64,000 nt of DNA from Ruditapes philippinarum (taxonomy: Eukaryota), in assembly GCF_026571515.1 (NCBI RefSeq), contig NW_026858894.1, positions 1-64,000 on the forward strand. Direction: 5' to 3'. Positions 8,679 through 64,000 of this stretch are shown piece after piece. The notes beneath the pieces were generated by a model. The model was not told where the DNA came from. It did no database searches and was given only the letters and a program-made list of their open reading frames with translations. The position numbers were made by a program, and so were the translations under genes. Every line of letters starts with the position of its first letter. Within the stretch, counting starts at the first letter, position 1.

Positions 8679-9551
8679 CTAGTTAGACCATAAATTGAAG
8701 TTTTTGAAACGTGCAAGCTTGTTGTCATGTCCAATTATAAAGTTGTTGTGTACTACAACGACGTGTTGGCGTTGCTTGTAATTTTGGTCCTGAAAGAACC
8801 GTTTTCCTGATGCAAACATATCTGGATCTAATATTTTCACACTTAGGTTCGAAAACTTCTGTATCAGTAATCTATTCAAAACGACTTGATCAACCTCTTT
8901 TTTATCTTGTCTCTCTAAAATCTGTTTCCATGCCAAAATTAACTTCCTTGATTTAGCGCTATTTTGTACAGCCATGAAACCTGGACATACATTGTTTTTA
9001 CCATCACTTTGAATCCATATATCATAGTCTCCTTCCAGATGCTGTAAAGGGTTTTGAAGCCAAACAGTATCTGCATCTGTATTGATAATATTTAATCCAA
9101 TATTTAACAGATCACTGATATATAATGACCGTCTTGATATTAAAGAATTGTATGGTTCAGAATTATACTTTACAGCCTTATCTATAGACGGAAGGTGAGA
9201 ATGGACAATATTTATTGCACCAGAATAATTCAGAATCAATTTGTCGTAAACATATTTATCTTCCGCAATGGCAATAACCGGTGCATTTATGCCAAGTTTT
9301 TGAAAATAAAAATGCCAATTTTGGAAAAAGTCATAAAAACCATTATTCACGGTGATCATTACTGTCCATTGATTGTGTGGTATTTTAAGTCCGTGGTTTC
9401 TAATATAGCTCGTCAAATTTGTTATTCCTGTTTTCAATATTTCCGTATCGTATGGTAATATAGTTTTTGTATTTAGATAAGTGGAAAGAAAAGCTATTCC
9501 AAGAATAAACATAAATGGTATGGCATGTTGTAAGTATAGAAATATCTTCAT
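8679..9551 (-). CDS. Nucleotide-diphospho-sugar transferase (Nucleotid_trans / CAZy GT77-like; RGXT-type xylosyl/arabinosyl-transferase family), type II membrane, 290 aa, single coding exon
   Basis: First ATG at 9551 (the ORF-track start at 9563 is a TTG). N-terminal TM helix (IPFMFILGIAFLSTYL), DxD motif in TDADTVWLQNP, CPGFM, DQVVLN, and C-terminal VHNNFIIGHDNKLARFK..NLW, all typical of GT77. Stop TAG at 8679-8681. Confidence 0.88.
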   Translation of the reverse strand: MKIFLYLQHAIPFMFILGIAFLSTYLNTKTILPYDTEILKTGITNLTSYIRNHGLKIPHNQWTVMITVNNGFYDFFQNWHFYFQKLGINAPVIAIAEDKYVYDKLILNYSGAINIVHSHLPSIDKAVKYNSEPYNSLISRRSLYISDLLNIGLNIINTDADTVWLQNPLQHLEGDYDIWIQSDGKNNVCPGFMAVQNSAKSRKLILAWKQILERQDKKEVDQVVLNRLLIQKFSNLSVKILDPDMFASGKRFFQDQNYKQRQHVVVVHNNFIIGHDNKLARFKNFNLWSN

Positions 9552-10139
9552 TGTCGGAATCAAGATTAATTACTGATATGTTTTTACCTTCCTTAGCATT
9601 AATATTAATATTAAAGTACATATTGGTTATTCAAAATGTTTTACAAAAATATACAAGATTATATTCACGTTGGTATTGCGTTTGTCTTGGCTTAGCTAAA
9701 GACGTGGCAAAATATCAACAAATTGTAATAGATATAACTGTTTTAAATATATACATGAACATATTGTGTAAACATTTGGACGTGATGTCATTGTTAGATA
9801 TACAGAAGTTATTGTTTTACTATTTAGGTTTATATTTAAAGTAAATGTAATTACATAGAATTGTCGTCATTTTGACAGAACTTTAATAAACATGGTATTC
9901 TTATAGTTTGATATCTTCGAAGAAAAAAGGAAAATGTATTCATTTCTAATTTCTAATTCATCAATTAAAACTCTATAATCATTTTTATCCAAGAAATTCT
10001 CTTTTATAAGAAAACCAAAATAACACATTAATTCATTAAATATATATTTTAAAAATCAGATGAAGACCGATCTACCTTAACATTTGTGCCCTAGTATTCA
10101 GTTTTTCCATATGCGTTATTATTTAAATTATTTGTAATC

Positions 10140-10750
10140 AACATTAAATATAAGTTCAAAGTTGTAATACTGTCAGTTATTTTATGTATTTGTTGTTGAC
10201 GCTTGTACATTATAAATGGAAACTCATCTTGCATATTTTACTCACTTTTTGAATTCTGCATTCTATCAACGTTTGACAAAATCAGTCATGGCCTGCAAAA
10301 TTATTAGGTTGCCGATTTGATATTTCTTGAATTTTTTATTTTCAATATTTAATTATCATTTTAATATACGTGTACCTTTTTTGGAATACATTTGGACAGC
10401 TTCAAAGTATATGTTATCGAAGAACCAGTAACCAAACACCAGTCGGATCAAGTTATCGATGAAAAACAACAACAGTTAGTTAGTAGGCTTAATAGTTTTT
10501 TATAAAATAATAAAAAAATCTTCAAATTTCTGGGATTGACATACTTTGTTTCTTCGTGTAAGTCAACAAAAATCTTTTATGAACAGTGATACTCCACTAT
10601 TTGTAGAAAATGTTGACTGGAATCATTACTATAGAGGTTTTCAGAGAATATATTGCAAGTATTAGAATTGTAATATTAAACCAAACATTGGGTAATTTCC
10701 ATGTTTATTTTATGCATCAAAGGTAGATGACTTAGACGAAAGTAAACATA
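10140..10750 (+). pseudogene. Inverted, degenerate paralogous copy of the 5' part of the CHST15-like locus (40370-41110)
   Basis: TATTTGTTGTTGACGCTTGTACATTATA, GAATACATTT..AGCTTCAAAGTA, TCGTGTAAGTCAACA and CATCAAAGGTAGATGACTTAGA all occur in the same order in the reverse complement of 40370-41110. Confidence 0.75.
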
Positions 10751-11161
10751 TATATTTTCATTTAATGTACTCAAATTTCTCAACGCTCTTATTATTTATT
10801 TGCTAACGGATAATCGAACTGATTTTATGTCAGCCAATTATCTATTGAATAAAGTTCTCAAATATGGATAAATTGTTCATTTCAAAACATAAAGGGTGTA
10901 TACTTTTAGAAATGCAATTTTGTTACAAAACCTCTTTCCATTTCTTAAAGATTTCAAATGGCCTTGCTGGATCGAGAATAATATTTATGATTCAAAACTA
11001 GTGTGAGATGTTTATCATATTTCTATCTGGAAGGAATGCTAAAATGCAGGACATGGCATTTAATACGCAACTAAATAAGTTTTTTATTGATGTTCAGATA
11101 TTCCTTTTAAAATATACACGACGAACACATAAAAGTATGTATATAAAAAAAGAAAATTATC

Positions 11162-11240
11162 AGGCTCAGTTTTATTGAGCCTGTTCATGGACAGTACTGG
11201 AAGTACAAGCTACCGTCCACGACCCATAGTATCTGGCTTA
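11162..11240 (+). repeat. ~80-bp double-hairpin interspersed element, copy 1 (other copies at 55011-55090 + and ~39735-39805 -)
   Basis: AGGCTC-N9-GAGCCT followed by TGGAC(A/G)GTA...TACCGTCCA and ending GGCTTAA. Three recognisable copies in the window. Confidence 0.75.
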
Positions 11241-12805: not shown

Positions 12806-14130
12806 ATGTTTATAAAGCAACGGAAAGAAAGAAAAGGGAAAAATAGATTAATTTTGATTTTGATATTACCACAAATGATTTACTTACTGATATACTTTCG
12901 TATTTACGGCGATTTTAAGTTTGATTTTTGGAGCATAAATCAAAATATTTCGGTAAGTAACAAGGGTGTGAAAGTCAAAGATTAATGATTGCACATATGA
13001 TCTATTGAAAGAAATAAAATGTTTCTGCTTGCATCGTCATGAAATTGACAATCTATTTGCATTGGAAATTTCCATGGATAAATTTTGATATTAATATTAT
13101 GTGCTTTTAAATCTTTATTTTATAGGATCAAACAGAATCCAAAAGTAAGTATAACAAGACTAACGTGCACTCAGAGACGTTTAAATTACGTGTAAACATG
13201 CATGCAAACTTTCTTGAAAACGTCAAAAATGATGTGCAAGAGCATAAAGTAAAACTCAGAAATGAAACAATCGTTGCATTGGAGAAATTAAAATCTGAAA
13301 TAATGAGAAGCGATACTGAACCTTTGTTAACATTATTCACGACATGGAATAACAATCCAGTCAAAAATGCTGTTCATAACATCACTTTAAGAAACTGGAT
13401 GACACTGCGTCCGTATGTGGTGTCGGTTATTTTCTTAAATGATACTTTGACGAAGCAATTTTTGAAACAGTATGGTTGCGAATATTTGACCATAAATAAA
13501 ACAGCTGGAGGCGGGATTCCTATTTTGAAGTATATGTACATAGATGTCATGCGATTTTTTAAATCAACATTCTATGCATACAGTAATGCTGACATATTGT
13601 TTACCGACACTCTGATTTATACATTATTTTCTCTTAAAGAATATATGAAACATTTAAGCATGCCTATTCTTATTGTAGGCAAAGGACATAACGTCAATTT
13701 TCTTACTATGTCAGAAGGGTTATCTTGGAAAAGTATAACACAAGTAGCTCAAGTGCGCGGTAAACTTTTCAATGGTTTTGCAGAAGATTACTTTATAACA
13801 ACTCCCGAATATCCTTGGAGTGATATAGAAGATGTTGTCATTGGACGGCGGGCCTATGACAACTGGCTAGTATATCGATCAAGAAAATTACAATTTAATG
13901 TAATTGACAGCACAAAAACAATTCTCGCTGTACATCAAACTACAGGTGCTGGTAACTACGAGGGGCATAAACAAACCAATTCAAATTATAATCATAATTT
14001 ACTTGTAAAATTATATAAATTTATAGAATATAAAACTGGATTTATCGAATGTATTGAAAAATATACAGACTACAAAAATGAAATACTTCTTGTAAAAACA
14101 AGGATTGTGGAGAAACAGTGCACGGTATGA
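12806..14130 (+). CDS. Uncharacterised GT-A-like type II membrane protein (putative glycosyltransferase, similar to the N-terminal domain of plant RAY1), 383 aa; exons 12806-12952 and 13126-14130
   Basis: Exon 1 (missed by the ORF track) reads MFIKQRKERKGKNRLILILILPQMIYLLIYFRIYG..., a basic tail plus TM helix, and ends at GTAAGT (12953). A polypyrimidine-TAG acceptor at 13125 joins in phase 0 to the long ORF. Motifs: LRNWMTLRP, GIPIL, YAYSNADIL, EDYFIT, IGRRAYDNWLV, IDSTKTILAVHQ. Confidence 0.82.
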
Positions 14131-19307: not shown

Positions 19308-22300
19308 ATGGTTCAAGACACTAACAGAGGAGTTCAGTCGAGAACTAAAACACGAATAAAAGTGAATCGGCTTTTCTTTGTGATTGGACTATTAGTATTA
19401 GTATGTATTTTTGATGTTGTTCATCAACGTAAAACGTTTATGGTAAGTTTAGATGCACTTCGTGTGTACAGTTTTCCATACATAAAATCACGTTACTTTT
19501 TTCGTTTGAATAATTCAAAATTTGTGTTGTTACTCTTTACAGGGTTTTTATTCAGAAGTAAACGGAGAAAAAGATGTAAATGTTGGAAATGACAAAACAT
19601 TATACGAATTTCAATAAATTATAAAATAACAATAAATCTTTCGAGACAGAAACAAAGACTCTTGCTGAAAATATTAAGAAAATGCGATACATTTACCAAT
19701 TAGCGCTTTTCCAAAAAGTTAAAATTCAAAAATTAAGAACTATCGTTAGTAAACATGTAAGGACAGGCGGCGAAAACATATACTATAATTATTATCTTAT
19801 CAGTTGATAAGTATTATCAATGTCGTATTCAGATGCAGATGAAAAGTAACAAAAGTAGATGTGAAAAGGTGATCGACGAAATGAATTTATTTCAAATACC
19901 TGATGAGGACATCATAGACAAAATGGACAACAATGCTTTGTATTTATTGTTTGACACGTGAGTATTGTTCAGTTTTATTGATAAGCTTTAAATGAACAAT
20001 ATTACAAGAATTAAACCAGTCGATACCCGTTCAGTCCTGCTTTCTAATATATTAATATATTATATAATGTTTCTTCGAACGAATTATTAACACTATACGA
20101 GTATGCACGTATGTATGCATGTTTTTATTCTAGTCATTGGCATTGTCGAAATGTCGAAAATTTACTTCCTCTTATTATCATCGTTATACTGTTTTACACA
20201 ATGCAGTTGATAAAGTATTGATTTATAACAATACAACTTTTTTTGTTTAAAAAATGATATTGTGCATTTAAACCTTTTGACAGTAACTCATTTCAAATTT
20301 GGATTTATGAATAATAAAGTGGCATTATGTCCATACAAGTATTTACAGTAATTTAATAAGTAAAAGTTAAATAACTTGATATTTTGCCATAATTGTACTA
20401 TGAGATAAAATCAATAATCAATAATCCGTGTGACCAAGGCATTTTCTTATATTTCGTTAATATAGTTAGCAAGATATATTAATAATTGTTACAGCATTTA
20501 AAATTCCTTTTTAAAAACTACATTGCTTAACTTTTAAAGTTTTTGTAGCTTTGAATTTATAAGCAATAGTATTTGAATCATTTGAAAAGATTGCAAAGGA
20601 TATCCGTTTTAGGATTTAAGTTGTGTTAAACTTCTATTTTTAAAAGCTGTGATTCAGTTGTATGTAGTAAAACACAAAAACTTACTTGTATTATATCCGT
20701 TGAAATCAATACAATATGTATGTGTGTCACAAGGTATGTTAATCTACAACAATACCACTGCTGCAATTTAACCAGACAAGGTCCGAAACAGTCATCAGGA
20801 AAAAATATATGTGAAGATTATTTTTTCAAACCAGGATCAAAATGCATAGTTTACTCTTTTGGGTAGGTTGTTTCTAATTTGATGAGTGTTTTATCTAGAT
20901 TACTTGTTTAAGCCTTTGTAAATTATATCAAAATTTAAAAAAATGTATTAATTCTGTTTTAAAGCTTTCAATAATGCATGCAATATTTTTGTTTTCATTC
21001 AGCATCATTAGATAGAAACATATTTTCTAATGAATCAGAAATCAAGATTAAACAGTTTCTGACAAATAAAAGTATTAGATTGATCTGAAAGAACCATTAT
21101 TTTGTTTTCTCGGAAACTAGAACATTGCAAGTAAATAAATCTAAATTAATAAATATTTTAATTCCTGTTCTCGATAAATTAAAGGTCCCAGTTAAATTTC
21201 GACTTCGAAGAAAGTATCTGGAGATCTTTCAAGTGTGAAATCCACACGTTTGATCCAAGGTTTGTTACGTTATTTGAATCTTTAATAATTTACTTTTTTC
21301 ACACTGAATAAAAAACACTTTTCTTATACGAGTACGTATTGGAAGCTCGACAACATCTATTTGAGGTAATATAAATATAAAAATATAAATATCTGGGTTG
21401 TGTTTCACTGAGAGTCCTAAGTCTAGAAACGGTCTTAAGACAAAAACCGATTCAGTTTTGTTTTTCAAAGAAAGATTTCCTCCTTACGTATGACTCTTAT
21501 GAAACTACTTGTTCAATTTCTTGATAGCCCTGTAGATAAGCATGACGAGATTGTGGGTTAAAGTTTATGTCATTTTACCTCTTATCATTTCTCAGGGGAA
21601 TGGAATTGGTTAATGTTCAAGTCTTTGACTAAAGATCAAATATTTGTTAAAAGGTCTCGAGTTATTTCTAATTTACCAATTAGTCCTCGGACTTATGATA
21701 CAATTAGGTCTTTGTCTTTATATGAAACGCAGCCCTGATCACTAAGTGTATTAAGTATTATTGATAGATTCCTATGTTTAAGATATATCTTAACATCTGT
21801 TAAACATGAAGATTTTATTAAACAGTTTAATATAATTAAACAGGGCAGAGTGTCTAAGTGTCGTTTTAAGTCATGCTTTTGTCATGTTTCAGAGTAAGGT
21901 AGCAATTTATAAACGCATCAATTTTAGACATAATATCTTAGATATGACAAACTAATATAGAAAATATAGAAAGTTATTTAATCTTATTCATTCAGCATGC
22001 CAGTTGAGGGGAAGACATTACCAACGTTTATAGATTATCATCTAATTGGTCTGTCCGGGAAAAATTTTATTCAAACGGAACCAGAAAAATGGAGACACCA
22101 CGATAATCCTTTGCTGAAAACATGGAAAATGCAAACCCTTTCATCAATCATGGACACGCTTAACCATTCAGTAGTACGTAATGCATACTTGATACTGTGG
22201 GGTGTTTCTATAGTTTTAAAGATAATCACATGACTCATTAACTGAACGTGACATTTTGTAAAATATTCGATTTTGTAGCTTCCTTTATAACTTATAAATC

Positions 22301-22806
22301 TGTAAAGGAGAAGTTTAAGAGATCATATAATATTCTCCTTGATTTAGAAAAATATATGTACGTAGTCTGTCAAGTTTAATGTGCCAAAATCATAGTTGTC
22401 TTGTACATTTTTTGTTGTTTTAAATTCTAATGTCATGTATTTTACTATATTGCAGACGACAATTGACATTTTGAAAATAGACATTGAAGGATGGGAATGG
22501 AACGCACTCCCTGATATGATAAAGACAGACATTCTACGTCATGTGAAACAACTCTGTATTGAACTTCACTTTGGATATAGCTTCAAGTATCAAACAACAA
22601 ATGGACGTATTAAACCAGTTTTTACTAAAAATACGTGGGGAAATGTTCCAATAAAGAATCAAATAAAGCTTTTGAAGCAGTTATTCAATAACAGCTTTCG
22701 AATAGTAAGAAATGAACCATTGAATTGGGGGACAATAAAAATTGAAAACAAGGTTATAAGAATTCTAAATGAATAAACACTTATAAATCTAAGATTTTTG
22801 CCCTGA
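19308..22806 (+). pseudogene. METTL24-like (Methyltransf_22) type II membrane methyltransferase, disrupted; exons 19308-19442, 19543-19756, 19833-19957, 20734-20862, 21185-21259, 21996-22173, 22456-22806
   Basis: All introns are GT-AG and phase-compatible. TM helix LFFVIGLLVLVCIF. Family motifs KNICED..CIVYSFG, CEIHTFDPS, IDILKIDIEGWEW, VKQLCIELH. Exon 2 (214 nt) has a frameshift and stop. An in-frame TAA at 22774-22776 precedes TLINLRFLP-TGA. Confidence 0.8.
21396..21734. mobile_element. MITE with imperfect TIRs and CTG target-site duplication (PIF/Harbinger-like), inside a METTL24-like intron
   Basis: CTG|GGTTGTGTTTCA ... TGAAACGCAGCC|CTG. Confidence 0.6.
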
Positions 22807-23159: not shown

Positions 23160-23410
23160 ATGGATTCCGAGAGGTCTATTATTTAGCGAATTTCACATTT
23201 AAGTTACTTTTATGGCCTTTAGTAAATATGTAGGGAATGAGAAGCAAAAGTTTCCTCAACGATCAATGAAAGTCGATTTGATTGATATTTACGATTCAAA
23301 TACGAATCAAAATGAACAATGATAATATTAATATATTGTTTCGACAATGGATACAGTAAATTTGAAACTGTTAGAAAAATATATCCTGAAAGAAAACTAA
23401 ATGAAATATA
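23160..23410 (+). pseudogene. Degenerate inverted relic of the last exon of the WSCD-type sulfotransferase
   Basis: Translates with indels to FREVYYLANF-TFKLLL..SKYVGNEKQKFPQRSMKVDLIDIYDS, versus FREVYHLANF..TFKSLL..SKYVEKEKRQFPNQAMEVDLFDIYDS at 31651-32015. Confidence 0.8.
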
Positions 23411-23644
23411 TTATTTTCATTACTTTTGCATTTTTCAAAATCATTATGTCATTAGGTTTTATGCGTCAATAGCCATGGCGTCAGTAAATACATTTTTAAC
23501 ACAGTGACTTATTTATATAACAAAGATTTTAGCAAAGATATTTTATTACAACAACAAATGATTGACGTAAAGAGAAAGACATGTAAGTATACTTATTTAA
23601 GATGCTTTATTATTCCGGTACGGTTAATATAACTAAAACTCATC

Positions 23645-25050: not shown

Positions 25051-25075
25051 TGGTTAAACTAACATAAACAAAATA

Positions 25076-48290: not shown

Positions 48291-49094
48291 AAATTTTATA
48301 CCCTTGTCCCGAATTCCGTGTCTGTAAATCAAAAATTCAGACAGTAGAGAAAGTAGGTAAACCGGTATCAAAATATCAAAAGTAGGTCAGCTGATATCAA
48401 AAATCGATTTGGCATCAGAAATTAAACTTCTGGTCCAAAATTAAAATCTGTATGTCAAAAAAACAAGAAAGACTGTAAAATGGTGTCAATAATATCAAAA
48501 GTAGGTCAGCTGATAACAGCTAAACTGATATCAAAATTCAATTGTGCATCAGGCTCAACAGCGTGTGTCAAAATTTATTGAAATGTGCTTTCTGCAAGTT
48601 TGAATCTAATTCGACAAAGATTGAAAAAAATACAATTTTTAACAGAATTCAATAAAAAAGAGCAATCAAACTAATCTCTGTCTGTAAGGTACAGGAAACA
48701 AATGTAATCTTACTTTAGGCCTAAGTTTACTTTCTGGGTAAAAATTTCACACTGACCTTCAAATGACCCTACAGAAAGTTAATGATGCAATGGGTATGCC
48801 AATTCTAGAGCTGAAAATTATTTGATGACGTTATGCTTAACAAGATTGTATTTGTGAAAAAATCAGAATTTATATTTTTTTACTATACAATTGAACTTTG
48901 CCATAGTGCATGTTTAGTGAATTTTGGGGTCAGGGTCTTATTTTAGCATGAAAATGAAAAAACTATGTGCAGATATGTTTTGACCAGATACAAAACGCAT
49001 AGTGTAATAATTGATAAAATGTAAAAGTATTCTTACTTGACAAAAAATAAGTATTTACTATAACATAGCTGTATACTATCTTTTCAATTAAGTA

Positions 49095-50547
49095 CGAGGG
49101 GTGTCCCAGAATTACGTGGACTTTTGCTGTAACTCAAAAACTACTGAAAATAAAAACAAACAAAATTAACATGAACAAAATGCAACTTTATTGCATTAGT
49201 ACAAAAAATTTCAAAGTTGTCCGGCAACTGGATCAGTGTCTGTGGGCAAGGTAATGAGACAATGGGTAGCGGGTGCGGGGCAGTTCATTCCGACGTTACG
49301 ACGTCATTCCGGTGGCGTCGCTAGTTGTTAATAAATGCGTGGCGTCGAATGTCAGTTTTTCTCAACATAGTCGCCGCCTAACTCAATACACCTATGGTGT
49401 CGATATATCCACTGGTCGTACACCGCCCTGTATAATAATAATAAAGCATACTATTAACTTTTGTTACGATAATAGTGTTAAAGACGACGGTGNNNNNNNN
49501 NNNNNNNNNNNNNNNNNNNNNNNNNNNNNNNNNNNNNNNNNNNNNNNNNNNNNNNNNNNNNNNNNNNNNNNNNNNNNNNNNNNNNNNNNNNNNNNNNNNN
49601 NNNNNNNNNNNNNNNNNNNNNNNNNNNNNNNNNNNNNNNNNNNNNNNNNNNNNNNNNNNNNNNNNNNNNNNNNNNNNNNNNNNNNNNNNNNNNNNNNNNN
49701 NNNNAGACAATGTGCATTCACAAGGGAAATAACCTATCATGCGCACTGCTTACTATAATAGCAGTTTGAGTTCACTTTCTTAAAAGCTGAAGCGGATAAA
49801 TTGCGTTTAAAATAATAAATTGTGATTAGCTTAATTTTTAAAAATCATTTTTTTAGACACAAAATTATTGCTTACTCTTGAATAGTACTCAGCATTGCAA
49901 CGCCTGTCCCGATCTATGACGTCCTTGACTTCCTAATATTGACGCCGCAGTCAACGTTGACTTTCTCCCACGACCCTTGTCGTCTTCAATATCCTCCCGG
50001 CCGTCTCGAAAACGCTTATGCCACTTGAAAACGAGTGATCGACAAACAGGAGGTCTCACTTTTGCAGTCTCCAACATTTCCTGCGTCTGTGTTGGCGTCT
50101 TCCCAAGATTAACACAAAACTTGATGATAGTCCGATGTTCCGCGTAGTCCGTGGACGTCATTTTTTGTTAAATATCCAAGAGCAACGGTTGTTAGTTGTC
50201 CGCTGGTAAACAATAATGGAAACAGCTATGACGTCAAAATTTCAATCGAACGTTCATATGACGTCACTGCATATTCTTACGACGTCGCGCCATTTTTTAC
50301 GTATAAATACGCAAGATATACGAAAGTAAAGACAACTTATTAATACAAAATATTGGACTGCCCCGCCCTGCGCATACTGCGTTACTATAGCGACGTAAAA
50401 TATAGAGAAGCAATGTTAGAAATTTAGAAATAATGGACATATTCATTAAGGATATGTTAAAGGTATTGTGTACAAATTTGCTAAAAAAATGCATTGAAAA
50501 ATAAAAAAGTTATAGCAAAAGTCCACGTTATTCTGGGACACCCCTCG
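49095..50547 (-). mobile_element. Mariner-family DNA transposon (internally deleted, contains N-gap 49493-49704)
   Basis: TA|CGAGGGGTGTCCCAGAATTACGTGGACTTTTGCT ... AGCAAAAGTCCACGTTATTCTGGGACACCCCTCG|TA. Confidence 0.92.
49889..50161 (-). pseudogene. Truncated mariner (Mos1-type HTH) transposase N-terminus
   Basis: EHRTIIKFCVNLGKTPTQTQEML..VFKWHKRFRDGREDIEDDKGRGRKST. No catalytic DDD domain follows. Confidence 0.88.
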
Positions 50548-51149
50548 TATTACCCATTTTTGAAAACATTTATGATTTAAAATCATCATTATAAAGTTAT
50601 TATATGAGTAAAAGGATGTTGTTAACCATTATATCCTTATAATGTGCTCAAATTATTTCATAAATATCAATCTATCTCTTGCCAGTCTTGGTCATGACCT
50701 CAAATACTTTCATCAGCAAACAGGTTATTTCTCCCAGCTATGGAATATTTTTTAAGGAAAATTGCATAACATAACACATTCCAACATAAGCTGTTTCTCT
50801 TTCATTCAAGAATATACTATGCTCAAATTTCATATTTGATAATATTTTATAATTGCTACACAGGGTCTTTGTAAATATAAAATAAATATGTTTTAACTCT
50901 ACACAAAGCTGTGTTTTAAATTATACAAACTATAGGTGGTTACAAGATGAATATGTAGTGTTATTAAAAAAGTGGCAGTTTTTTTTAGAAAAGACTAATT
51001 GTTCTCGACCTGTAATAGGGCACACAGCTTCCTATAGATAATTTATTCATTCATTTGTTCAAATTAGAAATACTTAGTAAAAATGACAAATATTACAATA
51101 AATCTATGTGATAATGATATTTTACGCAATGATGAACATAGTGTATCTT

Positions 51150-52022
51150 TAAACTACAATTTGAAGAAATGCCATGTCCTGGGACATTTAACTTTTAGCG
51201 CTCCCTAAAAGGGCAATCTTATTAATATGAGCAAATTTGAAAGAAGACTACATAAAACTACTACAGACAAGTGTCGCCGATCATTCATCATTTACATCAG
51301 TACAAACTATAATTTAAATACTTTTCTAATTTTAGCTATAGAGACCCCAAAAGGGGCCAATCAAATTAATATTAGCAAATTTAATAAAATCATTTATTAG
51401 GTCTGAAGGAGACGTTATAAGGCTAAAAAGGGCCAGTCAAATTGATATGAGCACACTTGATAAAATACTACCTAAAAATGCTACAGACAAATTTGGTGAT
51501 CATCCATCTATTAGTTCATTAGAAGATGACGATTTCTTTTTAGCTTTAGCTGCTCCTAGAAGGATCCAATCAAATGAATATGAGCAAATTTGATAAAAGA
51601 CTACCTAAGAAAGCTACAGACAAAGTTTGCTGATCATCCATCTATTAGTACAGTAGAAGAAGACGATAAAAGTTTTTTTTCTCTATTTTTATCTTTAACG
51701 GCCCCTAAAAGGGTCCAATCAAATTAATATAAGCAATTTTGATAAAATACTACATAAGAATGCTGCAGACAAAGTTTGGTGGTCATCCATCATTTACTTT
51801 TAAATTAGTAGAAGAAGGTGTTTAAAAGTGTTTCTTTTTTTAGCTCTTTTGATCCTTACAAGGGGCCTGTCTCAAGACTGTCACAAGAATGCTACAAACC
51901 AAATCTTAGGTAAATCTTCCCAGCAGTTTCAAAGAAGTAGAAAACAAATGATGACGGACGCCGGACCATCCCCCTTTGGTACTAATAGCTCACCCTTAAC
52001 CTTCGGTTTTGGTGAGCTAAAC
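51150..52022 (+). mobile_element. Helentron-associated (HINE/pearl-like) element with an internal tandem array of ~120-150 bp units
   Basis: About five repeats of CCCCTAAAAGGG..CAATCAAAT.AATATGAGCAAATTTGA..CTACAGACAAA..GATCATCCATC. Terminal palindrome TAGCTCACC...GGTGAGCTA at ~51987-52020, preceded by GACGGACG. Confidence 0.7.
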
Positions 52023-53250
52023 ACGTATAGTAAACAATTTGAAAAATATTCTTGTTCTATGTCATTGAAACACTTATATATGAGCATATGGCACTTTAAC
52101 TTTTTAATTTGAAAATAAAAACAAATTAAACTCTTCTTACATAGCTTTGTAGAAAATAACAGTAGTTTCTTCTACAAACTCACGATTTAAAGCTTTTAAA
52201 TATCTATTTAAATACACTGTTTTCATTCTAAAAACTCTATAATTATATATTTTTATATATATCTTATCATCCTCTTATAAGAGTTTTACAAAGAGTGTTC
52301 ACTAAAAAGATATTGCATTTTCAATGTTTCATTTATTGTTTGTTTTCTAATGACCCTAGACATAGATCATTATTAGAAAGGCACTACTTCAAAGAGTAGC
52401 TAGCAATGTAAACGGAAATCCTATTGTTTATGGTTATTTTAGTTTGGTATTAATCTAATGCTGTTATCTTTCTAAAGAAACTTTAGACTGTGTGCGTATT
52501 ACTGCCCTACATATGATCTTAAACATTAACGGACAAGGAACATCTGACTTCATCCATACTATGATTCTTTTTCCAAGCCATGTCTGTTTTAATTAATGAA
52601 GGAGAAATTAAACAGAGATACGGGTCTTATTTTGTACTTATTTCTACTATAAAATCCCAATACGGTTTATTGATACTGATATACTTGTAGTTTTGTAATT
52701 TTAAATGCGGCTTTAACAATTCATATATTTCAATTTGAAGCATAAAAGATCGTTGAAAAAAAAATCAAAAGTATAATTCATTGTTTGTTATTGCTACAAC
52801 GATTTGTACAAATTTGATAAATAACAATTGCGGAATTGGTTCCATTGAACCTGGTCTTTATTATTTATTATTACAAATATTTTACCAATATTACAATAAG
52901 ATTGCATACTTGCTAGATTAAAACAATGTCGTAGAAGAGATAGATGCCATTAACATATTGTGGTTAGATATGATTCACAGATCATCAATAAGCATGTCAT
53001 GAATTATAAAATATTTTGAAGAACTACCATCAAATGTGTTAATGATGCCAAAAATTAGCTACTTAAATACAACAAACAAATATATGGGCTTTATTTATTT
53101 TGATTATAGTTAAAGATTTAAAACCTAACATACCAAACCAAAATCAACCTATTTCACCTTTTTTACACACACATGTGTATAAACGCACACGCTGCATTAC
53201 AAAAGTCCCAATTATGTTGTTTCCAAAATAAGATTTCTACAGAACATCTT

Positions 53251-53460
53251 AGGGGTGCCAGTGGCACGGTGGATAATGACGTTGACTTCAAACCACTTTC
53301 CCCTCACCACTGTGCTATCTAGCTAGCTTACTTAACTTACTTCGGCCATACTACTGAGGTGCCTGCCTAAAATAATACATGCAAGGGCATCTGAGGTCAT
53401 TCTCTACCAGTAACGCTGAACGTCGCCATATGACATATTGGTGTGACGTAAAACCCAACG
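53251..53460 (+). mobile_element. tRNA-derived bivalve-type SINE (internally deleted)
   Basis: A-box-like GTGGCACGGTGG, CCCCTCACCACTGTG, CTAGCTAGCTTAC, GGGCATCTGAGGTC, and tail GTCGCCATATGAC..GGTGTGACGTAAAACCCAAC. Confidence 0.7.
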
Positions 53461-54379
53461 AGAAAAGAAAAGTATTAAAAAACAACCGTCTTAATCATTA
53501 TATTTGTTTATTTTTATAATACTACTATTGAGCAATTTATTTCTCTATAAACGTTATTAATATCTGCATATATATTACGAATCGTCAGATAAGAAACAAT
53601 TGTTCAATTCATAGCACACATGTTTCGTTTTAAAGTTGTCATTCAGTATTTCTTTGCACCGTTTTCAACAGGAACTCTTCAGAAATTATTTCTCAATCGA
53701 ATATTGCGATTGTTCAGTTACCGGATTTTATCGCCGATTATCATTGAGTTACATTTAAATGGTTGAAACCACAAACGCCAAAAGACATTGACAATTTTAC
53801 TGATATGTTTAGAATCTATGTAATACATAATCATTCTAGATATTTTACAATGGAATTCCTTTTAAAAATACACGTGTAATATCAAAGCCCATGCCCTTGC
53901 CATTATTTGAACGGTGTTTATACCCAATAATAAGTAAAAATTGATACATACATAAAATAAGTGATCAAAATCAATAAATCTATAAGTATCAACCTTTGTT
54001 GTTCTTCTTGATATGCAAGTTTTCTATCTACAATGAAACTAGAATATCATTGAAACTAAAATACCTTTTATAAATTCTAAAAAAAAATAAAACTACATAC
54101 TTATCTGTTGAAAAAATAATAATATTGATATTCTCTCAAGGAGACAAAAGTAGAATTTTCAGGACGAGGTTGTTGTTCTAGAGATAGAATCTCATATTTA
54201 CCTAACGAAATACTTTCTCGATAGAAAGAAAGCTTCGAATAAACTTGCTTGCAATAGAAGATATTGCAGCAAAATCCATTTAAACAGTTTGTGAGATAAT
54301 TAAATGTGCAAAATATAATAAGCAAAGGACTCCATCAAAGATTACAGAGTATTCGTGATCAAACGTAGTGGACTAGTTA

Positions 54380-55479
54380 CGAGGGTGCTTCAAAACGTAA
54401 TGTTTCTTTTTATATGTGTTTCCTTACTTAAAACTAACGTGTTGGTTGAATAATTCTATTCAGGTATGTAGTCTGATCACAAGCACGAAATCAAAGTACA
54501 TATTGCTTCAAAATAATAAAGATATTCACTTGTATATGTGTGTGACAGTTTGCAGATTTGTTAAAACATTTCAAGCTGGTATATCAAGCATTAAAGATGC
54601 AGGTCGAAAAGGTCGCCCAAACACTCATGTTACCAGAAAGAATGTGTCTTCGGTTGAGGTACTTGAAGAAGAAGATGGGCGATACACAGTGGAAGAGATA
54701 GCCAGTAAGGTAGAACTCTCAAATAGAATAGGAGCGCTCATATTCTGACCCAAAATTTGGGAATAAAAAGATATGTACTCGCTGATTCCCCCAATCACTG
54801 ATCAGAAAAACAGCGCAATAAAGTTTTGTAAACATTTTTCTTTAATTGTTCCGGTACAGTGGTACAAACAACTTCAAAGAAAGAAACAGCTATTACTGGG
54901 TAGTTCATAAAGTGTAGAACAACATAGAATATATACTAAAAAAATGCTCCAAAATAGAGAAAGCAAGAATCCCTAAAGAAAGTCCAACACAACATGATTG
55001 AAAATGTTGCAGGCTCGGTTTAATTGAGCCTGTTCATGGACGGTACTGTAATGTGCAAACTACCGTCCACGCCCCCTAGCACCGGCTTAAGCAGAAGTCA
55101 ACATTTAAAATGAAATGAAAACCCATAAAAGTTTAATTGTCGTAGACTTTCTGATCAAACAAAAAGGTAATATCTTAAACCACCTTCCCTACTCTACTGA
55201 TTCAAGTTCACGTTATTTTTTTTTTCCGGCGGCTCAAAAAAGATCTTTTTGGGCGGAGATATAATAACAGGAGTGCACTTTGGGGCGCAGTGCATCATTG
55301 TCTAACATTGATACCAAGGAAAACAACTATGGGGCTTTTAAGCCATGGATTTTTAGATAAACAAAGTAAATTTCGGTTAAGGGGGCAGATTTCGAAGGGT
55401 TCAAATAAATCATTTTGTGGCACTATTAGCTGTCTTCAATTTTATTTATCAAGAAACATTACCTTTTGAAGCACCCTTG
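54380..55479 (+). mobile_element. Degenerate mariner transposon with transposase relics
   Basis: TA|CGAGGGTGCTTCAAAACGTAATGTTTCTT ... AAGAAACATTACCTTTTGAAGCACCCTTG. Relic peptides FQAGISSIKDAGRKGRP..EDGRYTVEEIA and HLPYSTD (cf. the mariner YSPDLAP motif) at ~55180. Confidence 0.85.
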
Positions 55480-57655: not shown

Positions 57656-57663
57656 CAGATGAG

Positions 57664-57722
<59 letters not shown>

Positions 57723-59773: not shown

Positions 59774-61772
59774 ATGAGACTGTATACCGTTAGTTATGTA
59801 GCTAGTACGAGCGTTCTAATTTACCTCGTTTATTTTATATACAAGAACCAGTCTTTGCAATTCTTTGACAAACGTTTCAGCCATAGAAACACACCTGATG
59901 ATAAAACTGAAGTTGTATGGCAAGGTGTATTTCCACATGACCGGACACATGTTGTGCATGCAGAAAATATCAAACCTCTGACTTTATCAATAAAAAGAAA
60001 CAGCTCGTTTGATTACAAAGCTGCCATGACGAAACTGAACGAAGCGAGGGTTAGACAGGACGACCCACGATTAATAAAGTTGATAAGGGATTACTACATT
60101 GAACCGCCATCAAAAACACCATATAACCTCACGAATCCTGAACAATTAGAATTCTCAAACGGACAAACGCCATTTGTTGACAGCAGGCTAAATTATATGG
60201 TAAGACAAATTAGTTGAAATTTCAAGATTTCTTATGTAAAGTTTTCCCCTGTTAGCCTCTGCGACTGAATGCAACTAAGAAATGACTGAATTAAAAGGCA
60301 TTTGCATTCTCAAATTCTGCAGTTAAGGTTGTCTATTATACCTGAAACTTTACTATGTGCACCATTTTCCATTCTCAACAAATTCGGCTGATATTCTCTG
60401 CTTAACCGAAAACAATTGTTCCGAATCTTGCAAATACTCTTTAAAGTAGAATTTCTCCGGATGCATGTTCATTTCATTAAGACTTCAAATTTTAGATTTT
60501 TGTATTTGAAATTGAAATGTATTCACACATTGCAAACGGCACATACAAGCCACGTTAGGTACTAAAAATAGGTAAAATATGCAAGAATAGCCCTTAATGC
60601 GATAGTCATGTAGATAAATTATGTTGAAAAATACCAAAACCAGTCACTTATCGCAAATATAAATATTATAATGTTATACTAAAATATCTGGAGTCATGCA
60701 ACATTCCAAATGCAGCTGCTTTACAATATATTTAATTGAAACCACTTTAATGATAAAATTAAAAATATTTAAGGCTCTCCTTTTTTACTGACGATGTGGG
60801 ACATCAGCAAATTGAGAACGCGTCACTTAAATATAAAAAATGTATACAATTGGTGTCAATTTAAATATAATCTAACACTCAAATGCCGACTTTCCAGTTT
60901 TTAATTATTCATAGAAATATAGCAGTTATGAACACGATATAATTGACCAAAAAAGATGAATAGTAAGATATATGATTTATCGCAATGTAAATTCCTTAAC
61001 AAATTATTCTTCAGGAGGGTGGATTTTACATTGAATGTGGAGCTTTGACTGGGGAAAAAGGATCAAACACCCTCTTTCTTGAAAAAGTACGGAAATGGAA
61101 TGGTTTACTTATAGAGGCAGATCCAGAAAACTTTAAAGTTTTAAAGACTAAGAACAGAAAGGCCTTTACTATGCACGCTTGTTTGAATACAAAACCATAC
61201 CCAGCAGTGGTAGGTACTTTTCACTACATGATGCAAACAAAACTTGACAATAAGAAATCCGTTATTACATAAAAGGCGCTGATTAAGATCCACTTTTAGT
61301 CTAACATTAGAAAGTATCATGTTTTGTGCTCTCACATAAAAATGATAACCATGTATTTATTTCATAATTCCTTTAGATGACGTTTAACAAAGCTTTTAAC
61401 AGAGGCCGAGTCGTCCACAATCAAGAAGCCAAGAATTGGATCAAGAGACATAATATCACAAAAGATGAAGTTCTGGTCCAGTGCTTCCCCCTCTATTCAA
61501 TCCTCCTAGCTTTAGGTCAGGTGAACGTTGATTTTTTAAGTCTAGATGTAGAAGGAGATGAGTTAAATGTTCTGAAGACCATTCCATGGGATAAAGTTTA
61601 TATGAAGATGTTGACAGTTGAGTATGTTCATGAAATAGGTTCATCGGGTGAGTTAAAGAAATATGTAGAAAAACAAGGGTACGATTCACTGTTGCAAGTG
61701 TCAAAAGGTGGCGGAGGTGTTAACGATATCATTTTTAGAAAGAAAGGGCTGACACATAAATATATCATTTGA
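59774..61772 (+). CDS. FkbM / Methyltransf_21 family (Drosophila Star-like) type II membrane methyltransferase, 338 aa; exons 59774-60199, 61015-61209, 61377-61772
   Basis: TM helix VSYVASTSVLIYLVYFIY. Motifs QDDPRLIKLIR, FSNGQ, SAM-binding loop GGFYIECGALTGE..SNTLFLEK..WNGLLIEADP, VQCFPLYSILLAL, DFLSLDVEGDELNVLKTIPW, LTVEY. Two phase-0 GT-AG introns and an intact frame. Confidence 0.9.
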
Positions 61773-62543
61773 AAATGTGTGTAAATCAATTTCATTTGTA
61801 TAGGCCAAACAAAATTAGCAAAGTTGTTGCATAATAATGTAATGGACATTGTGATGAATATTTTAAAGCTTATGTTGGTTGAAGGAATAATTTGTAAAAT
61901 ATTTGACATCATAATTGTGTGTGCATGGAATATTCTTTTGAATATTGACACATGTAAAGGTAAAAGTCAAGTTGGGAAACCAGCCATGTGACGGTAGAGG
62001 ATATATTTCTAAATATACAGTTTAATAAAACATTAACAAGTTCAGCTAAGCAATTATTGTTGAAAATATGATAGATAAAAATTATTATCTATTAAAGGTT
62101 GATTGACATTGTCTGACGGAAAATGGTGTCGGATGTACCTTTTTCGGTACTATGTTTTAGTACAAACAATCTAATTATATTTTGATATGATACTGCTTTT
62201 AGTCAAATCGTTTTCTTATTACAAATTGTCTGAAAACAAACAAATCTCTTAAAACGTTTAACATTCAAGAACGAAAGCATCACATTTCCTTCGGATGTCT
62301 ATTAGACTTTCTGACGAAGAGTTAAGATATCCATGGCATTCAAGAACAAACAAAAAAATGTTTTTAAATCAACAAGACTTAGTGTTTTTTAGTGTTTACC
62401 ACAGCAAGATATTTAATTGTATTTCAAGAAGTCGTTTTGGTTAATCGTTAAATAAAAACATTTGGGATCCTTTTACAGGACTGTACTTTATCGCATTTTA
62501 TCTTTTTAACAAACATGTCATGCAGCGCGTCAAACCATTATGT

Positions 62544-62733
62544 NNNNNNNNNNNNNNNNNNNNNNNNNNNNNNNNNNNNNNNNNNNNNNNNNNNNNNNNN
62601 NNNNNNNNNNNNNNNNNNNNNNNNNNNNNNNNNNNNNNNNNNNNNNNNNNNNNNNNNNNNNNNNNNNNNNNNNNNNNNNNNNNNNNNNNNNNNNNNNNNN
62701 NNNNNNNNNNNNNNNNNNNNNNNNNNNNNNNNN
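62544..62733. other. Assembly gap (N run)
   Basis: Run of N. Confidence 1.
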
Positions 62734-63792
62734 AATTATTTGAAATTGGATGACTATGAAAAGAAGTTAGGTTCAGCATATATACAGTATAGCAAAAGGT
62801 AACTTTACCGGATTTGACATTTTTTCAAGACAGCAAAGTAGTATTATCTGAAAAGTTTTGATAAAGTTAATTTTTTGCTGTAAGAAATGAAAAAGAATGG
62901 TATATCAGTATTTTTGACCCTGCAAATGATTTAGCTTTGATAATGTTGTCGTAACTTTGGGTGTTTGTGGACGGATGGTTGTATGGTTTTTAATCGGAGT
63001 AACTGTTTACTTTGATTTCTTTACAAGAAGTATCGAAGCAATAGGAACAAAGGAAGAATATTTTCAGCCGAGCTAAAAAGGCCTTCGTTAAAAAAGACTG
63101 TTTTGACAACATATGTCCAATGTTTCATCGATACCGTTAAGTTGTAATACAGTAGTTTGTCATATAATGAAATGCAATGATGTTCAATGCTTTTATATTA
63201 ATAATTATATGGAACAACATTTTCTTTAAAAATTTATTACTTTATCGTACTTCCATTTTTAGCATATCTGCTATTCAAAAAATGTTGTGAATACACATTA
63301 TGTGTTTTAATACTTGAAGAGTATTGTTTGAATTGTAGCATTACCTTATACTAGGAGATAAGTATGTTCCATATTGAAATAAAATACGTTTGCTGTTTTA
63401 ACTACACTTTCATCTACACCTTCCTCATCTGACCTGTCACTTAAACATGACCTCAAGTTTAATACTATCGTAGTTATAGATTGCCTGATTTAATGAATGT
63501 ATGTAGCAGCTATAATTATCCTTACAACTCACAATAGCACGTAATATCATATCACGTCATATCATGTGTATTTGTCAGAATAACGTTTATTATTTTCATT
63601 CGTGTACACTATCATAAATCTAACATATGGTTTACATAACTGGTTTGTGATTTGTAAATTTTTATAAGAGTTTGTTCCTCAATCTCCAGATTCAAACACG
63701 TGTTATAATTTTAATGCATCAACGAACTTTTTAACTATGAGAATATCTTTGTTTCGATCTTTTTTTCGACCGGTCATCAATGTTTGTTGATT

Positions 63793-63980
63793 TTAGTTTC
63801 GTCGTGGAAACTTGTATCTCACATATCCCATTAATGCAGCCATATCTTCGTTGAAAGATCTATAAAAGGCATACAGCAAGTCATCCGTCTCTTGTTTAGC
63901 CGGCCAAGTACAGTTTTCTTTTGAAACATTTTTCTTTCTCAAGCTTAAAATTGTATGAATTAACGTGTTATCAACTTCAC
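63793..63980 (-). CDS. Terminal exon of a second CHST15-like sulfotransferase extending beyond the window
   Basis: Acceptor TTTTTATATTTAAG, then an open phase-1 exon: (G)EVDNTLIHTILSLRKKNVSK..KQETDDLLYAFYRSFNEDMAALMGYVRYKFPRRN-TAA. This matches the ET..LL..FY.PFN..LA.LL C-terminus of the family. It is absent from the ORF track. Confidence 0.72.
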
Positions 63981-64000
63981 CTTAAATATAAAAACAACAT

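What the first reader, a model, noticed from the sequence alone, without database searches (positions are those of the whole stretch)
8679..63980. Candidate metazoan glycan biosynthetic gene cluster: eight non-paralogous Golgi enzyme families side by side
Seen: every recognisable host gene in 64 kb is a glycosyltransferase (GT77, RAY1-N-like GT-A, GT2-like, GT14), a sulfotransferase (WSCD-type, two CHST15-like) or a SAM methyltransferase (METTL24-like, FkbM/Star-like). Where the N-terminus is visible they have type II membrane topology, and I found no unrelated gene in between. Established: animal gene clusters are usually tandem paralogues, whereas mixing backbone and tailoring enzymes is the layout of bacterial polysaccharide loci and fungal or plant BGCs. 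Mollusc glycans are known to carry O-methylated sugars, xylose, fucose and sulfate. Inference: the locus is a co-inherited pathway for one decorated glycan (mucus, shell matrix, gamete coat or immune epitope).
Basis: partly seen in the sequence, partly recalled or inferred. Interest (0 to 1): 0.95.

Follow-up and report, generated by a model that had tools for sequence, protein, structure and literature searches.

The report
Mixed glycan-enzyme gene island in clam
A Manila clam contig holds, side by side, working and decayed genes for about eight different kinds of Golgi enzymes that add sugar, sulfate or methyl groups; the grouping is far beyond chance and recurs elsewhere in the genome, but it looks like a fast-turnover duplication island, not a proven single-pathway cluster.

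Summary
The observation largely holds. The window is the first 64 kb of a 166-kb Ruditapes philippinarum contig. Every recognisable non-transposon gene on the whole contig is a glycan-modifying enzyme.

- **In the window:** GT77, an unassigned GT-A family, a GnT-I-like (GT13-like) transferase, two subfamilies of membrane sulfotransferase and two FkbM-type methyltransferases.
- **Beyond the window:** GT11 and ARSB-like sulfatase exons.
- **Corrections:** the "GT2-like" gene is GT13-like. GT14 is present only as relics. One CHST15-like gene is truncated and the other mostly lies outside the window. About eight further units are pseudogene fragments.
- **Structure:** the contig is a patchwork of inverted and direct multi-gene block duplications with reciprocal decay.
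- **Genome-wide:** excluding this contig, unlike glyco-families lie within 64 kb of each other 25 times, against 2.7 expected, on 14 contigs. A C1q control gives 4 against 2.9.

The clustering is therefore real and recurrent. "One pathway for one glycan" remains untested: the tools for expression and cross-species synteny were closed, and only a weak hint from Potamilus was found. The best reading is a birth-and-death island of glycan-tailoring genes.

The scan noted a GT92 birth-and-death cluster elsewhere in this genome, but no mixed cluster like this one.

The parts
8679..9551 (-). GT77 (Nucleotid_trans) glycosyltransferase gene: single exon, 290 aa, N-terminal signal anchor, intact
   Evidence: PF03407 E 2.3e-31. 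Own gene call P0121. Invariant D159 and D161. KD 1.90 at residues 3-21.
10353..11053 (+). Relic of a CHST15-like sulfotransferase (exon 2-3 fragments), upstream of ORF2
   Evidence: tblastn of P0174 and P0175. Paralogous to contig 149.4-150.5 kb.
13165..14130 (+). Large 3' exon of a mollusc-wide, unassigned GT-A-fold family (about 390 aa when full length). The N-terminal anchor exon was not located.
   Evidence: 283 homologues. Homologues align from residue 86-111 onwards. AF2 pLDDT 87 with GT-A fold hits. No Pfam family.
19308..22773 (+). METTL24-like / FkbM-type methyltransferase gene. Candidate exons: 19308-19592, 20630-20863, about 21150-21240, 21982-22230 and 22396-22773. Integrity not verified.
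   Evidence: PF05050 24.7 bits and PF13383 21.5 bits on the last exon. Signal anchor in exon 1. Frame reading.
23209..24025 (+). Two adjacent relics: a sulfotransferase fragment (23209-23397) and a GT77 fragment (23575-24025)
   Evidence: (55% identity, 3 stops).
26531..27792 (+). GnT-I-like (GT13-like) GT-A glycosyltransferase gene, RefSeq LOC132754585, 357 aa. Exons 26531-27448 and 27634-27792. Intact.
   Evidence: P0128 is 100% identical. Foldseek 1FO8 1.2e-9, POMGNT1, GnT-II. Invariant E170-D171-D172.
27958..28691 (-). GT14 (Branch) relic, tail-to-tail with the GT13-like gene
   Evidence: blastn to contig 86.4-87.4 kb. tblastn 46-65% identity.
31654..33693 (-). Three ORF-exons: 33388-33693, 32569-32949 and 31654-32070. 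Looks intact.
   Evidence: PF00685 E 5e-4. Atlas 0.97 to Sulfotransfer_1 clusters. Signal anchor KD 2.53.
38432..42184 (-). CHST15-like sulfotransferase copy A, LOC132754587. Exons 42184-42095, 40798-40607, 40186-39962 and 39258-39142; the 3' half is degenerate, so the gene is truncated.
   Evidence: 145-aa model. The distal copy at 147388-152904 keeps seven exons.
45755..48295 (+). GT14 relic: the N-terminal exon and the C-terminal part remain; Branch positions of about 1-140 are deleted
   Evidence: No PF02485 hit in the window.
29210..53530 (.). One arm of a large inverted segmental duplication. Its partner is contig 164,747-134,304, at 80-91% nucleotide identity.
49889..54748 (.). Mariner-like HTH remnants (49889-50161 on the minus strand, 54416-54748 on the plus strand), and assembly gap 2 just upstream (49493-49704)
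59774..61772 (+). FkbM-domain methyltransferase gene. Three ORF-exons: 59774-60217, 61000-61269 and 61377-61772. Signal anchor present; looks intact; single copy on the contig.
   Evidence: PF05050 E 1e-8, 35.9 bits..
62802..63088 (+). GT11 fucosyltransferase relic
   Evidence: tblastn with the contig GT11 ORF, 38-54% identity
63369..63671 (-). GT13-like relic
63796..63981 (-). Last exon of CHST15-like copy B, which continues to about 68.6 kb, outside the window
   Evidence: exons at 64273-68582. (81.8% identity to the last-exon region of copy C).

Best explanation
The locus is a real, non-chance neighbourhood of unlike Golgi glycan-tailoring genes. It has grown by repeated local duplication and inversion of multi-gene blocks, followed by reciprocal decay of the duplicates: a birth-and-death 'glyco-island'.

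Shown:
- The intact members carry type II signal anchors.
- They belong to GT77, an unassigned GT-A family, a GnT-I-like family, membrane sulfotransferases (CHST15/HS3ST-like and a second subfamily) and FkbM-type methyltransferases. GT11 and ARSB-like exons lie further along the contig.
- The same unlike families also sit together on many other contigs of this genome.

Inferred:
- Each enzyme adds a terminal sugar, sulfate or methyl group to glycans in the Golgi.
- Linkage arises because blocks are copied as units, and it may be reinforced by a shared regulatory domain.
- The island supplies a fast-evolving repertoire of glycan decorations. It is not the steps of one fixed pathway.
For: - **Family identities:**
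- **Signal anchors:**
- **Whole-contig content:**
- **Block duplications:** window 29.2-53.5 kb matches contig 164.7-134.3 kb, inverted; 22.4-28.7 kb matches 91.7-86.4 kb, inverted; 45.8-48.3 kb matches 83.8-86.9 kb, direct; 10.1-15.7 kb matches 149.4-156.2 kb.
- **Reciprocal decay:** the window keeps the second sulfotransferase and ORF2 but has a truncated or relic CHST15-like gene. The distal copy keeps a seven-exon CHST15-like gene but has a broken sulfotransferase and an ORF2 relic.
- **Relics:** at least eight in the window.
- **Lineage-specific turnover:** paralogues are 77-91% identical, Mercenaria homologues 44-58%.
- **Genome-wide co-location, excluding this contig:** 18 observed against 1.35 expected pairs within 30 kb; 25 against 2.7 within 64 kb (simulation maximum 9 in 2000 runs), on 14 contigs. 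The C1q control gives 4 against 2.9.
- **Recurring block:** GT11, GT13-like and GT14 occur in the same order and orientation on C11885 and at C7381 86-102 kb.
Against: - No expression or regulatory data could be obtained, so a shared regulatory domain and a 'repertoire' function are inference.
- Family counts from the six-frame genome search are lower bounds, and contigs are short.
- Some co-locating contigs may be recent duplicates or haplotigs of each other, which inflates the count of independent events.
- There was only one control family.
- GT77 with GT11, and GT77 with sulfotransferase, recur at five or more loci. In the one family where it could be measured, the sulfotransferase copies at three of these loci are only 31-33% identical to the window's. 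This could equally mean selection for linkage, which favours the pathway reading.
- The GT13-like copies on C8235 and C2961 are discrete 1.85-kb single-gene duplications, not blocks.
Confidence: 0.55

Rival explanations
1. It is a true BGC-like pathway cluster. The intact members are co-regulated and act in sequence on one glycan, for example a fucosylated, sulfated and O-methylated epitope of mucus, shell matrix or gamete coat. Linkage is kept by selection.
For: - After all the duplication and decay, one intact-looking copy of nearly every family remains on the contig.
- Unlike families recur together at loci with distant paralogues: GT77 with sulfotransferase on C15124, C9849 and C14609, where the sulfotransferase is only 31-33% identical to the window's, and GT77 with GT11 on C14609, C9093, C10293 and C10729.
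- In Potamilus streckersoni a GT13-like gene (CHS0354_037231) and three ORF2-family genes (CHS0354_037207, 037211 and 037217) share one 4.88-Mb scaffold, 14-24 gene tags apart.
- Gene 'bundles' of unlike enzymes are now documented in animals (PMC12833800).
Against: - There is no expression, product or orthology evidence.
- No intact GT14 survives on the contig.
- No nucleotide-sugar synthesis, PAPS or transporter genes are present.
- Intact copies are spread over 150 kb among relics.
- The closest cross-species homologues are far more diverged than the paralogues.
- The Potamilus spacing is loose and is a single observation.
- In Mya the two families sit on different chromosomes.
Confidence: 0.2
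2. It is a neutral neighbourhood. A few glyco-genes happened to be neighbours long ago, and local or segmental duplication multiplied the arrangement. Linkage has no functional meaning.
For: Block duplications account for most adjacencies on this contig. C6377, C13730 and C11885 look like copies of parts of it. Relics are abundant.
Against: - Seven different families co-locate on 14-16 other contigs, at about 9 times the expected rate, while the C1q control does not.
- Several associations involve old paralogues.
- CHST15-like exon 3 is 97% identical between duplicates whose flanks are about 86% identical, with dN/dS of about 0.3. At least some duplicated members are therefore under constraint.
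Confidence: 0.2
3. It is an artefact: a chimeric scaffold, collapsed or uncollapsed haplotigs, or foreign (viral or HGT) DNA.
For: Three scaffold gaps lie in the window. The assembly has 15,874 contigs. Some genome-wide hits occur in near-identical pairs.
Against: - The remaining 102 kb of the contig has no gaps and shows the same mixture.
- The flanks of gap 2 abut in an ungapped paralogue.
- Each gap-free piece but one is itself mixed.
- The genes have introns, host-like GC of about 30%, RefSeq models and homologues across bivalves, gastropods and annelids.
Confidence: 0.05

Closest known systems
Bacterial polysaccharide loci and plant or fungal biosynthetic gene clusters
   Same: Unlike 'backbone' glycosyltransferases and tailoring enzymes (sulfo- and methyltransferases) lie side by side within tens of kb.
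   Different: The genes are monocistronic animal genes with introns. There are no precursor, transporter or regulator genes. About half of the units are pseudogene relics. Co-regulation and a common product are not shown. The structure is dominated by recent block duplications.
Animal biosynthetic 'gene bundles' (sponge oro alkaloid bundle, PMC12833800)
   Same: Animal-type enzymes of unlike families are collected in one chromosomal region that standard BGC tools do not recognise.
   Different: The sponge bundles were defined by conservation across species and validated biochemically for a small molecule. Here conservation is untested and the presumed products are glycans.
Small outlier chromosome of Mamiellales algae (bioRxiv 10.64898/2026.02.10.705097)
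   Same: A low-GC, transposon-rich, fast-evolving region with few orthologues, enriched in glycosyltransferases, methyltransferases and sulfotransferases. This works-like analogue fits a glycan-diversifying island in an arms race.
   Different: It is a whole chromosome in a unicellular alga, with a demonstrated transcriptional switch linked to virus resistance. No phenotype or expression data exist here.
Birth-and-death tandem arrays of glycosyltransferase paralogues (the GT92 array noted in this genome, s1-803930; vertebrate FUT3-5-6, from my own knowledge)
   Same: Local duplication, pseudogene relics and lineage-specific expansion.
   Different: Those arrays hold one family. Here at least six superfamilies are interleaved and are copied together as blocks.

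Membership tests
GT77 (Pfam PF03407 Nucleotid_trans) | Domain match over the curated cut-off | tested here: met
   109.8 bits against a cut-off of 22, covering profile positions 6-208 of 208
GT77 (Pfam PF03407 Nucleotid_trans) | DxD metal-binding motif and type II anchor | tested here: met
   D159 and D161 are invariant in A3. Anchor at residues 3-21.
GT13 (GnT-I / POMGNT1) | Fold most similar to GnT-I, with the EDD motif | tested here: met
   Foldseek 1FO8 E 1.2e-9, TM 0.45-0.50, then 5GGI. E170-D171-D172 invariant.
GT13 (GnT-I / POMGNT1) | Sequence-level membership (Pfam or PDB sequence match) | tested here: not met
   Only a sub-threshold GT25 hit. POMGNT1 phmmer E 0.58. I therefore call it 'GT13-like', not a member.
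   No Pfam Glycos_transf_2 hit. GT13 and GT16 structures rank above the GT2 structures.
GT14 (Pfam PF02485 Branch) | Intact Branch domain in the window | tested here: not met
   No window hit in the genome-wide search. The window copies lack Branch positions of about 1-140 or are degenerate. The contig copy at 86.1-87.0 kb has in-frame stops.
Carbohydrate sulfotransferase, CHST15-like (PF00685/PF13469) | Sulfotransferase domain with the 5'-PSB motif; homologues named CHST15-like | tested here: met
   Exon 39953-40222 carries the PKCGTT motif. Homologues carry PF00685 at E 1e-12 to 2e-21. RefSeq names. PDB HS3ST and NDST hits.
Carbohydrate sulfotransferase, CHST15-like (PF00685/PF13469) | Complete catalytic domain (3' half) in window copy A | tested here: not met
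   No exons match beyond about residue 175 of the 253-aa homologue P0175. The RefSeq model is 145 aa.
WSCD-type sulfotransferase | WSC domains plus specific similarity to WSCD1/2 | not tested
   Only generic PF00685 similarity was shown. No WSCD reference was available.
FkbM-type methyltransferase (PF05050/PF13383) | Domain match over the cut-off | tested here: met
   61377-61772 scores 35.9 bits against a cut-off of 22.7. 22396-22776 scores 24.7 bits for PF05050 and 21.5 for PF13383, just under the 22.4 cut-off.
Biosynthetic gene cluster (pathway cluster) | Three or more non-homologous enzyme families physically adjacent, beyond chance | tested here: met
Biosynthetic gene cluster (pathway cluster) | Co-expression or co-regulation of members | not testable with these tools
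Biosynthetic gene cluster (pathway cluster) | Conservation of the mixed cluster in related species | tested here: inconclusive
The only evidence is locus-tag proximity in Potamilus.
Biosynthetic gene cluster (pathway cluster) | Members act on one product | not testable with these tools
   Needs enzymology and glycomics.

The most novel reading that the evidence does not exclude
Bivalve genomes carry conserved, co-regulated cassettes of unlike Golgi enzymes (GT77, GT11, membrane sulfotransferase, GnT-I-like, an unassigned GT-A and FkbM methyltransferases). These cassettes together build lineage-specific decorated glycans such as fucosylated, sulfated and O-methylated epitopes. They would be the first glycan biosynthetic gene clusters in animals, and they would point to the long-sought glycan O-methyltransferases of molluscs.
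Probability: 0.18. Interest if true: 0.85.

Novelty: new variant of a known kind. Interest (0 to 1): 0.6.

Why it matters
Animal gene clusters are mostly tandem paralogues. A statistically solid, genome-wide tendency for unlike glycan-tailoring enzyme families to sit and duplicate together would be a new kind of genomic organisation for glycosylation.

It would also give a physical short-list for orphan activities. These include mollusc glycan O-methylation, unusual sulfation, and the substrates of animal GT77 and of the unassigned GT-A family.

It would offer candidate loci for rapid glycan diversification at mucosal surfaces, which matters for pathogen and virus binding in farmed clams.

Even under the neutral reading, the locus is a clean example of multi-gene block duplication with reciprocal gene loss.

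Tried and rejected
- **Chance:** rejected by simulation and by a C1q control.
- **Viral or HGT insertion:** rejected. GC matches the flanks, the genes have introns, and homologues occur across bivalves, gastropods and annelids.
- **Homology among GT77, ORF2 and the GT13-like family:** none by hhalign, probability below 1%. The two methyltransferases are not BLASTP-similar either.
- **'RAY1-N-like' label for ORF2:** not supported by anything I could test. There is no Pfam hit, and only generic GT-A fold hits.
- **Pfam on 20 unassigned ORFs and Rfam on the window:** nothing beyond transposon remnants.
- **PF13383 genome-wide:** only four weak hits, none on this contig.
- **GT77 homologue search:** only seven hits, useless for locus-tag synteny.
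- **Literature searches:** no description of mixed glyco-gene clusters in molluscs.
- **Spliced models:** joined models were not built or searched. All searches were exon by exon.

Full report
**Source and context**

The window is G000:C7381:1-64000, the first 64 kb of a 166,323-bp contig in a 1.41-Gb assembly of 15,874 contigs. Names attached to identical or near-identical proteins identify the organism as Ruditapes philippinarum, in its RefSeq-annotated assembly. GC is a uniform 28-34%. I fetched the rest of the contig. It has no gaps other than the three in the window.

**Gaps, tested first**

The gaps lie at 17451-17587, 49493-49704 and 62544-62733, all between genes. No exon or relic that I mapped touches them.

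- **Gap 2:** the sequences on either side (window about 47.6 kb and 51.36 kb) abut at contig position 136,624 in an ungapped inverted paralogue. This supports the order and orientation of the join.
- **Gaps 1 and 3:** I found no such support.
- **Consequence:** three of the four gap-free pieces contain unlike families, so a chimeric join would not remove the observation.

**What the genes are**

- **8679-9551(-):** an intact single-exon GT77 gene (PF03407, E 2e-31; own gene call P0121).
- **13165-14130(+):** the large last exon of a family found throughout molluscs (283 hits). It has no Pfam family. The AlphaFold model is confident (pLDDT 87) and matches GT-A glycosyltransferases only generically, such as K4CP, CHSY3 and LARGE1. 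Full-length relatives are about 390 aa and align from residue 86-111 onwards, so the anchor exon must lie upstream. I did not find it.
- **26531-27792(+):** RefSeq LOC132754585, two exons, 357 aa. Its model (pLDDT 85) is closest to GnT-I, POMGNT1 and GnT-II, and the EDD motif is invariant. It is therefore GT13-like, not GT2-like. By sequence it is not a GT13 member.
- **31654-33693(-):** a three-ORF membrane sulfotransferase (weak PF00685; Atlas 0.97). The label 'WSCD-type' was not verified.
- **CHST15-like family:** full-length homologues carry PF00685 and PF13469, match HS3ST and NDST structures, and are named CHST15-like by RefSeq.
  - Window copy A (38.4-42.2 kb) has four 5' exons and a degenerate 3' half. 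Its RefSeq model, LOC132754587, is only 145 aa.
  - Copy B has only its last exon in the window and runs to 68.6 kb.
- **Two FkbM-type methyltransferase genes:** both reach the PF05050 cut-off. They are not BLASTP-similar to each other.
- **GT14:** present in the window only as two relics.
- **Further relics:** CHST15-like at 10.35-11.05 kb, sulfotransferase at 23.2 kb, GT77 at 23.6-24.0 kb, GT11 at 62.8-63.1 kb and GT13-like at 63.4-63.7 kb.
- **Topology:** six genes have an N-terminal hydrophobic anchor after a short tail.
- **Other ORFs:** twenty unassigned ORFs gave no Pfam family, apart from mariner and RT remnants. Rfam found nothing.
- **Homology between families:** GT77, ORF2 and the GT13-like family show no profile-profile homology.

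The honest count is about six superfamilies, or eight subfamilies. One of these (GT14) is represented only by relics.

**The rest of the contig shows the same mixture**

- CHST15-like copy B (63.8-68.6 kb).
- A mariner transposase (70.5-71.3 kb).
- A stop-interrupted GT14 (86.1-87.0 kb), tail-to-tail with a GT13-like pseudogene (88.2-88.9 kb), and a METTL24-like relic at 91.4-91.7 kb.
- ARSB-like sulfatase exons (95.1-97.5 kb; E 1e-21 to human GalNAc-4-sulfatase).
- An intact-looking GT11 ORF (101,356-102,267; PF01531, E 9.5e-32).
- CHST15-like copy C (107.6-114.4 kb).
- A LINE reverse transcriptase (126.7-128.6 kb).
- From 134 to 165 kb, an inverted copy of window 29-53 kb.

**Architecture**

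Self-comparison shows several duplicated multi-gene blocks:

| Window (kb) | Contig partner (kb) | Orientation | Nucleotide identity | Content |
|---|---|---|---|---|
| 29.2-53.5 | 164.7-134.3 | inverted | 80-91% | sulfotransferase, CHST15-like, GT14 relic |
| 22.4-28.7 | 91.7-86.4 | inverted | 67-81% | METTL24-like, GT13-like, GT14 |
| 45.8-48.3 | 83.8-86.9 | direct | 71-86% | GT14 |
| 10.1-15.7 | 149.4-156.2 | direct | 66-80% | CHST15-like, ORF2 |

Decay is reciprocal. The window keeps the second sulfotransferase and ORF2, while its CHST15-like copies are truncated or relic. The distal block keeps a seven-exon CHST15-like gene, while its sulfotransferase is broken and its ORF2 is a 58-residue relic.

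CHST15-like exon 3 is 97% identical between arms whose flanks are about 86% identical, with dN/dS of about 0.3. The last exon of the sulfotransferase gives about 0.7, with indels.

Some GT13-like copies elsewhere (C8235, C2961) are discrete 1.85-kb single-gene duplicates with identical boundaries.

**Copy number and chance**

The families are strongly expanded. These are lower bounds from six-frame searches:

| Family | Matches |
|---|---|
| GT77 (PF03407) | 69 |
| PF00685 sulfotransferase exons | 154 |
| GT14 (PF02485) | 61 |
| CHST15-like exon | 42 |
| GT13-like | 36 (about 20 loci) |
| FkbM (PF05050) | 29 |
| GT11 (PF01531) | 25 |
| Second sulfotransferase subfamily | 17 |
| ORF2 family | 16 |

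I collapsed hits into islands and excluded C7381. Unlike glyco-families then lie within 30, 64 and 100 kb of each other 18, 25 and 31 times, against 1.35, 2.7 and 4.2 expected under uniform placement (maximum 6, 9 and 13 in 2000 simulations). These pairs fall on 11, 14 and 16 contigs. Pairs with the C1q control family match expectation (1 against 1.4; 4 against 2.9; 4 against 4.5).

C7381 is the richest locus. Five other contigs hold three families within 64 kb: C14609, C13730, C11885, C6377 and C4778. C11885 repeats the order and orientation GT11, GT13-like, GT14 seen at C7381 86-102 kb.

Some of the co-locating contigs are, however, copies of parts of this one.

**Relatives**

From source names, Potamilus streckersoni has a GT13-like gene (CHS0354_037231) and three ORF2-family genes (CHS0354_037207, 037211 and 037217) on one 4.88-Mb scaffold. 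This is a loose, single hint. In Mya the two families sit on different chromosomes.

Within-genome paralogues (77-91% identical) are much closer than the homologues in Mercenaria, of the same family Veneridae (44-58%). The expansions are therefore recent and lineage-specific.

**Expression**

The only indirect evidence is the existence of RefSeq models for two genes. Joined spliced models were neither built nor searched.

**Interpretation**

The best-supported reading is a birth-and-death island of Golgi glycan-tailoring genes that duplicates in multi-gene blocks. It is part of a genome-wide habit of these families to sit together.

- The relics, the reciprocal decay and the recent lineage-specific copies argue against a fixed pathway cassette.
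- The recurrence of GT77 with GT11, and of GT77 with sulfotransferase, at loci carrying old paralogues argues for something more than neutral copying.
- The single-pathway reading stays alive at roughly one in five.

The closest analogues are animal 'gene bundles' (PMC12833800) and, for how it may work, the glycosyl-, methyl- and sulfotransferase-rich hypervariable outlier chromosome of Mamiellales algae (bioRxiv 10.64898/2026.02.10.705097). I found no published description of such mixed glyco-clusters in molluscs.

**Verdict**

The pathway interpretation is unproven. The finding is moderately to highly interesting as a new variant of functional gene neighbourhoods in animals.

Noticed in passing
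window 4815-8413: A tandem duplication of about 2.65 kb. The ORF pairs 4815-5036 / 7415-7675 (+) and 5473-5760 / 8126-8413 (-) are nearly identical. No Pfam family was found.
   Followed up: partly
window 29074-29540 and 44022-44570; contig 71.6-72.1, 80.8-81.9, 116.1-116.5, 145.0-145.4 and 164.4-164.7 kb: A short interspersed repeat of about 460 bp, 73-79% identical, with at least seven copies on the contig. It carries a conserved pseudo-ORF and flanks gap 1 and several duplication breakpoints. It is probably a MITE or SINE, and might mediate the rearrangements.
   Followed up: no
contig C7381 95,144-97,464 (L012:1144-3464): Exons of an arylsulfatase B-like (GalNAc-4-sulfatase) gene, with E 1e-21 to human ARSB (1FSU). 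They lie in the same island as the CHST15-like genes, whose vertebrate namesake acts on GalNAc-4-sulfate.
   Followed up: partly
contig C7381 101,356-102,267(-) (L012:7356-8267): An intact-looking GT11 alpha-1,2-fucosyltransferase ORF (PF01531, E 9.5e-32). Relics lie at window 62802-63088 and at contig 106.9-107.2 and 132.7-133.1 kb. Genome-wide, GT11 sits near GT77 on four other contigs.
   Followed up: yes
G000:C6377 11-33 kb (L006-L008): A unit of about 10 kb, repeated three times: CHST15-like fragment (-), GT77 (+), GT13-like fragment (+). Its GT13-like fragment is 95-96% identical to the window's GT13-like gene. It is a recently amplified relic-plus-gene cassette.
   Followed up: partly
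G000:C8235 and C2961 (L002, L003): GT13-like paralogues were duplicated as a discrete 1.85-kb unit (gene with its intron), with identical boundaries equivalent to window 26358-28167. This suggests a specific single-gene duplication mechanism.
   Followed up: no
window 49889-50161(-) and 54416-54748(+); contig 70,537-71,340(+): Mariner-type transposase remnants. The contig copy has PF01359 at E 8e-20. A non-LTR reverse transcriptase lies at contig 126.7-128.6 kb.
   Followed up: partly
window 57,640-57,700: A long homopolymer run that reads as poly-F or poly-K in ORFs 57518-57877 and 57606-57812.
   Followed up: no
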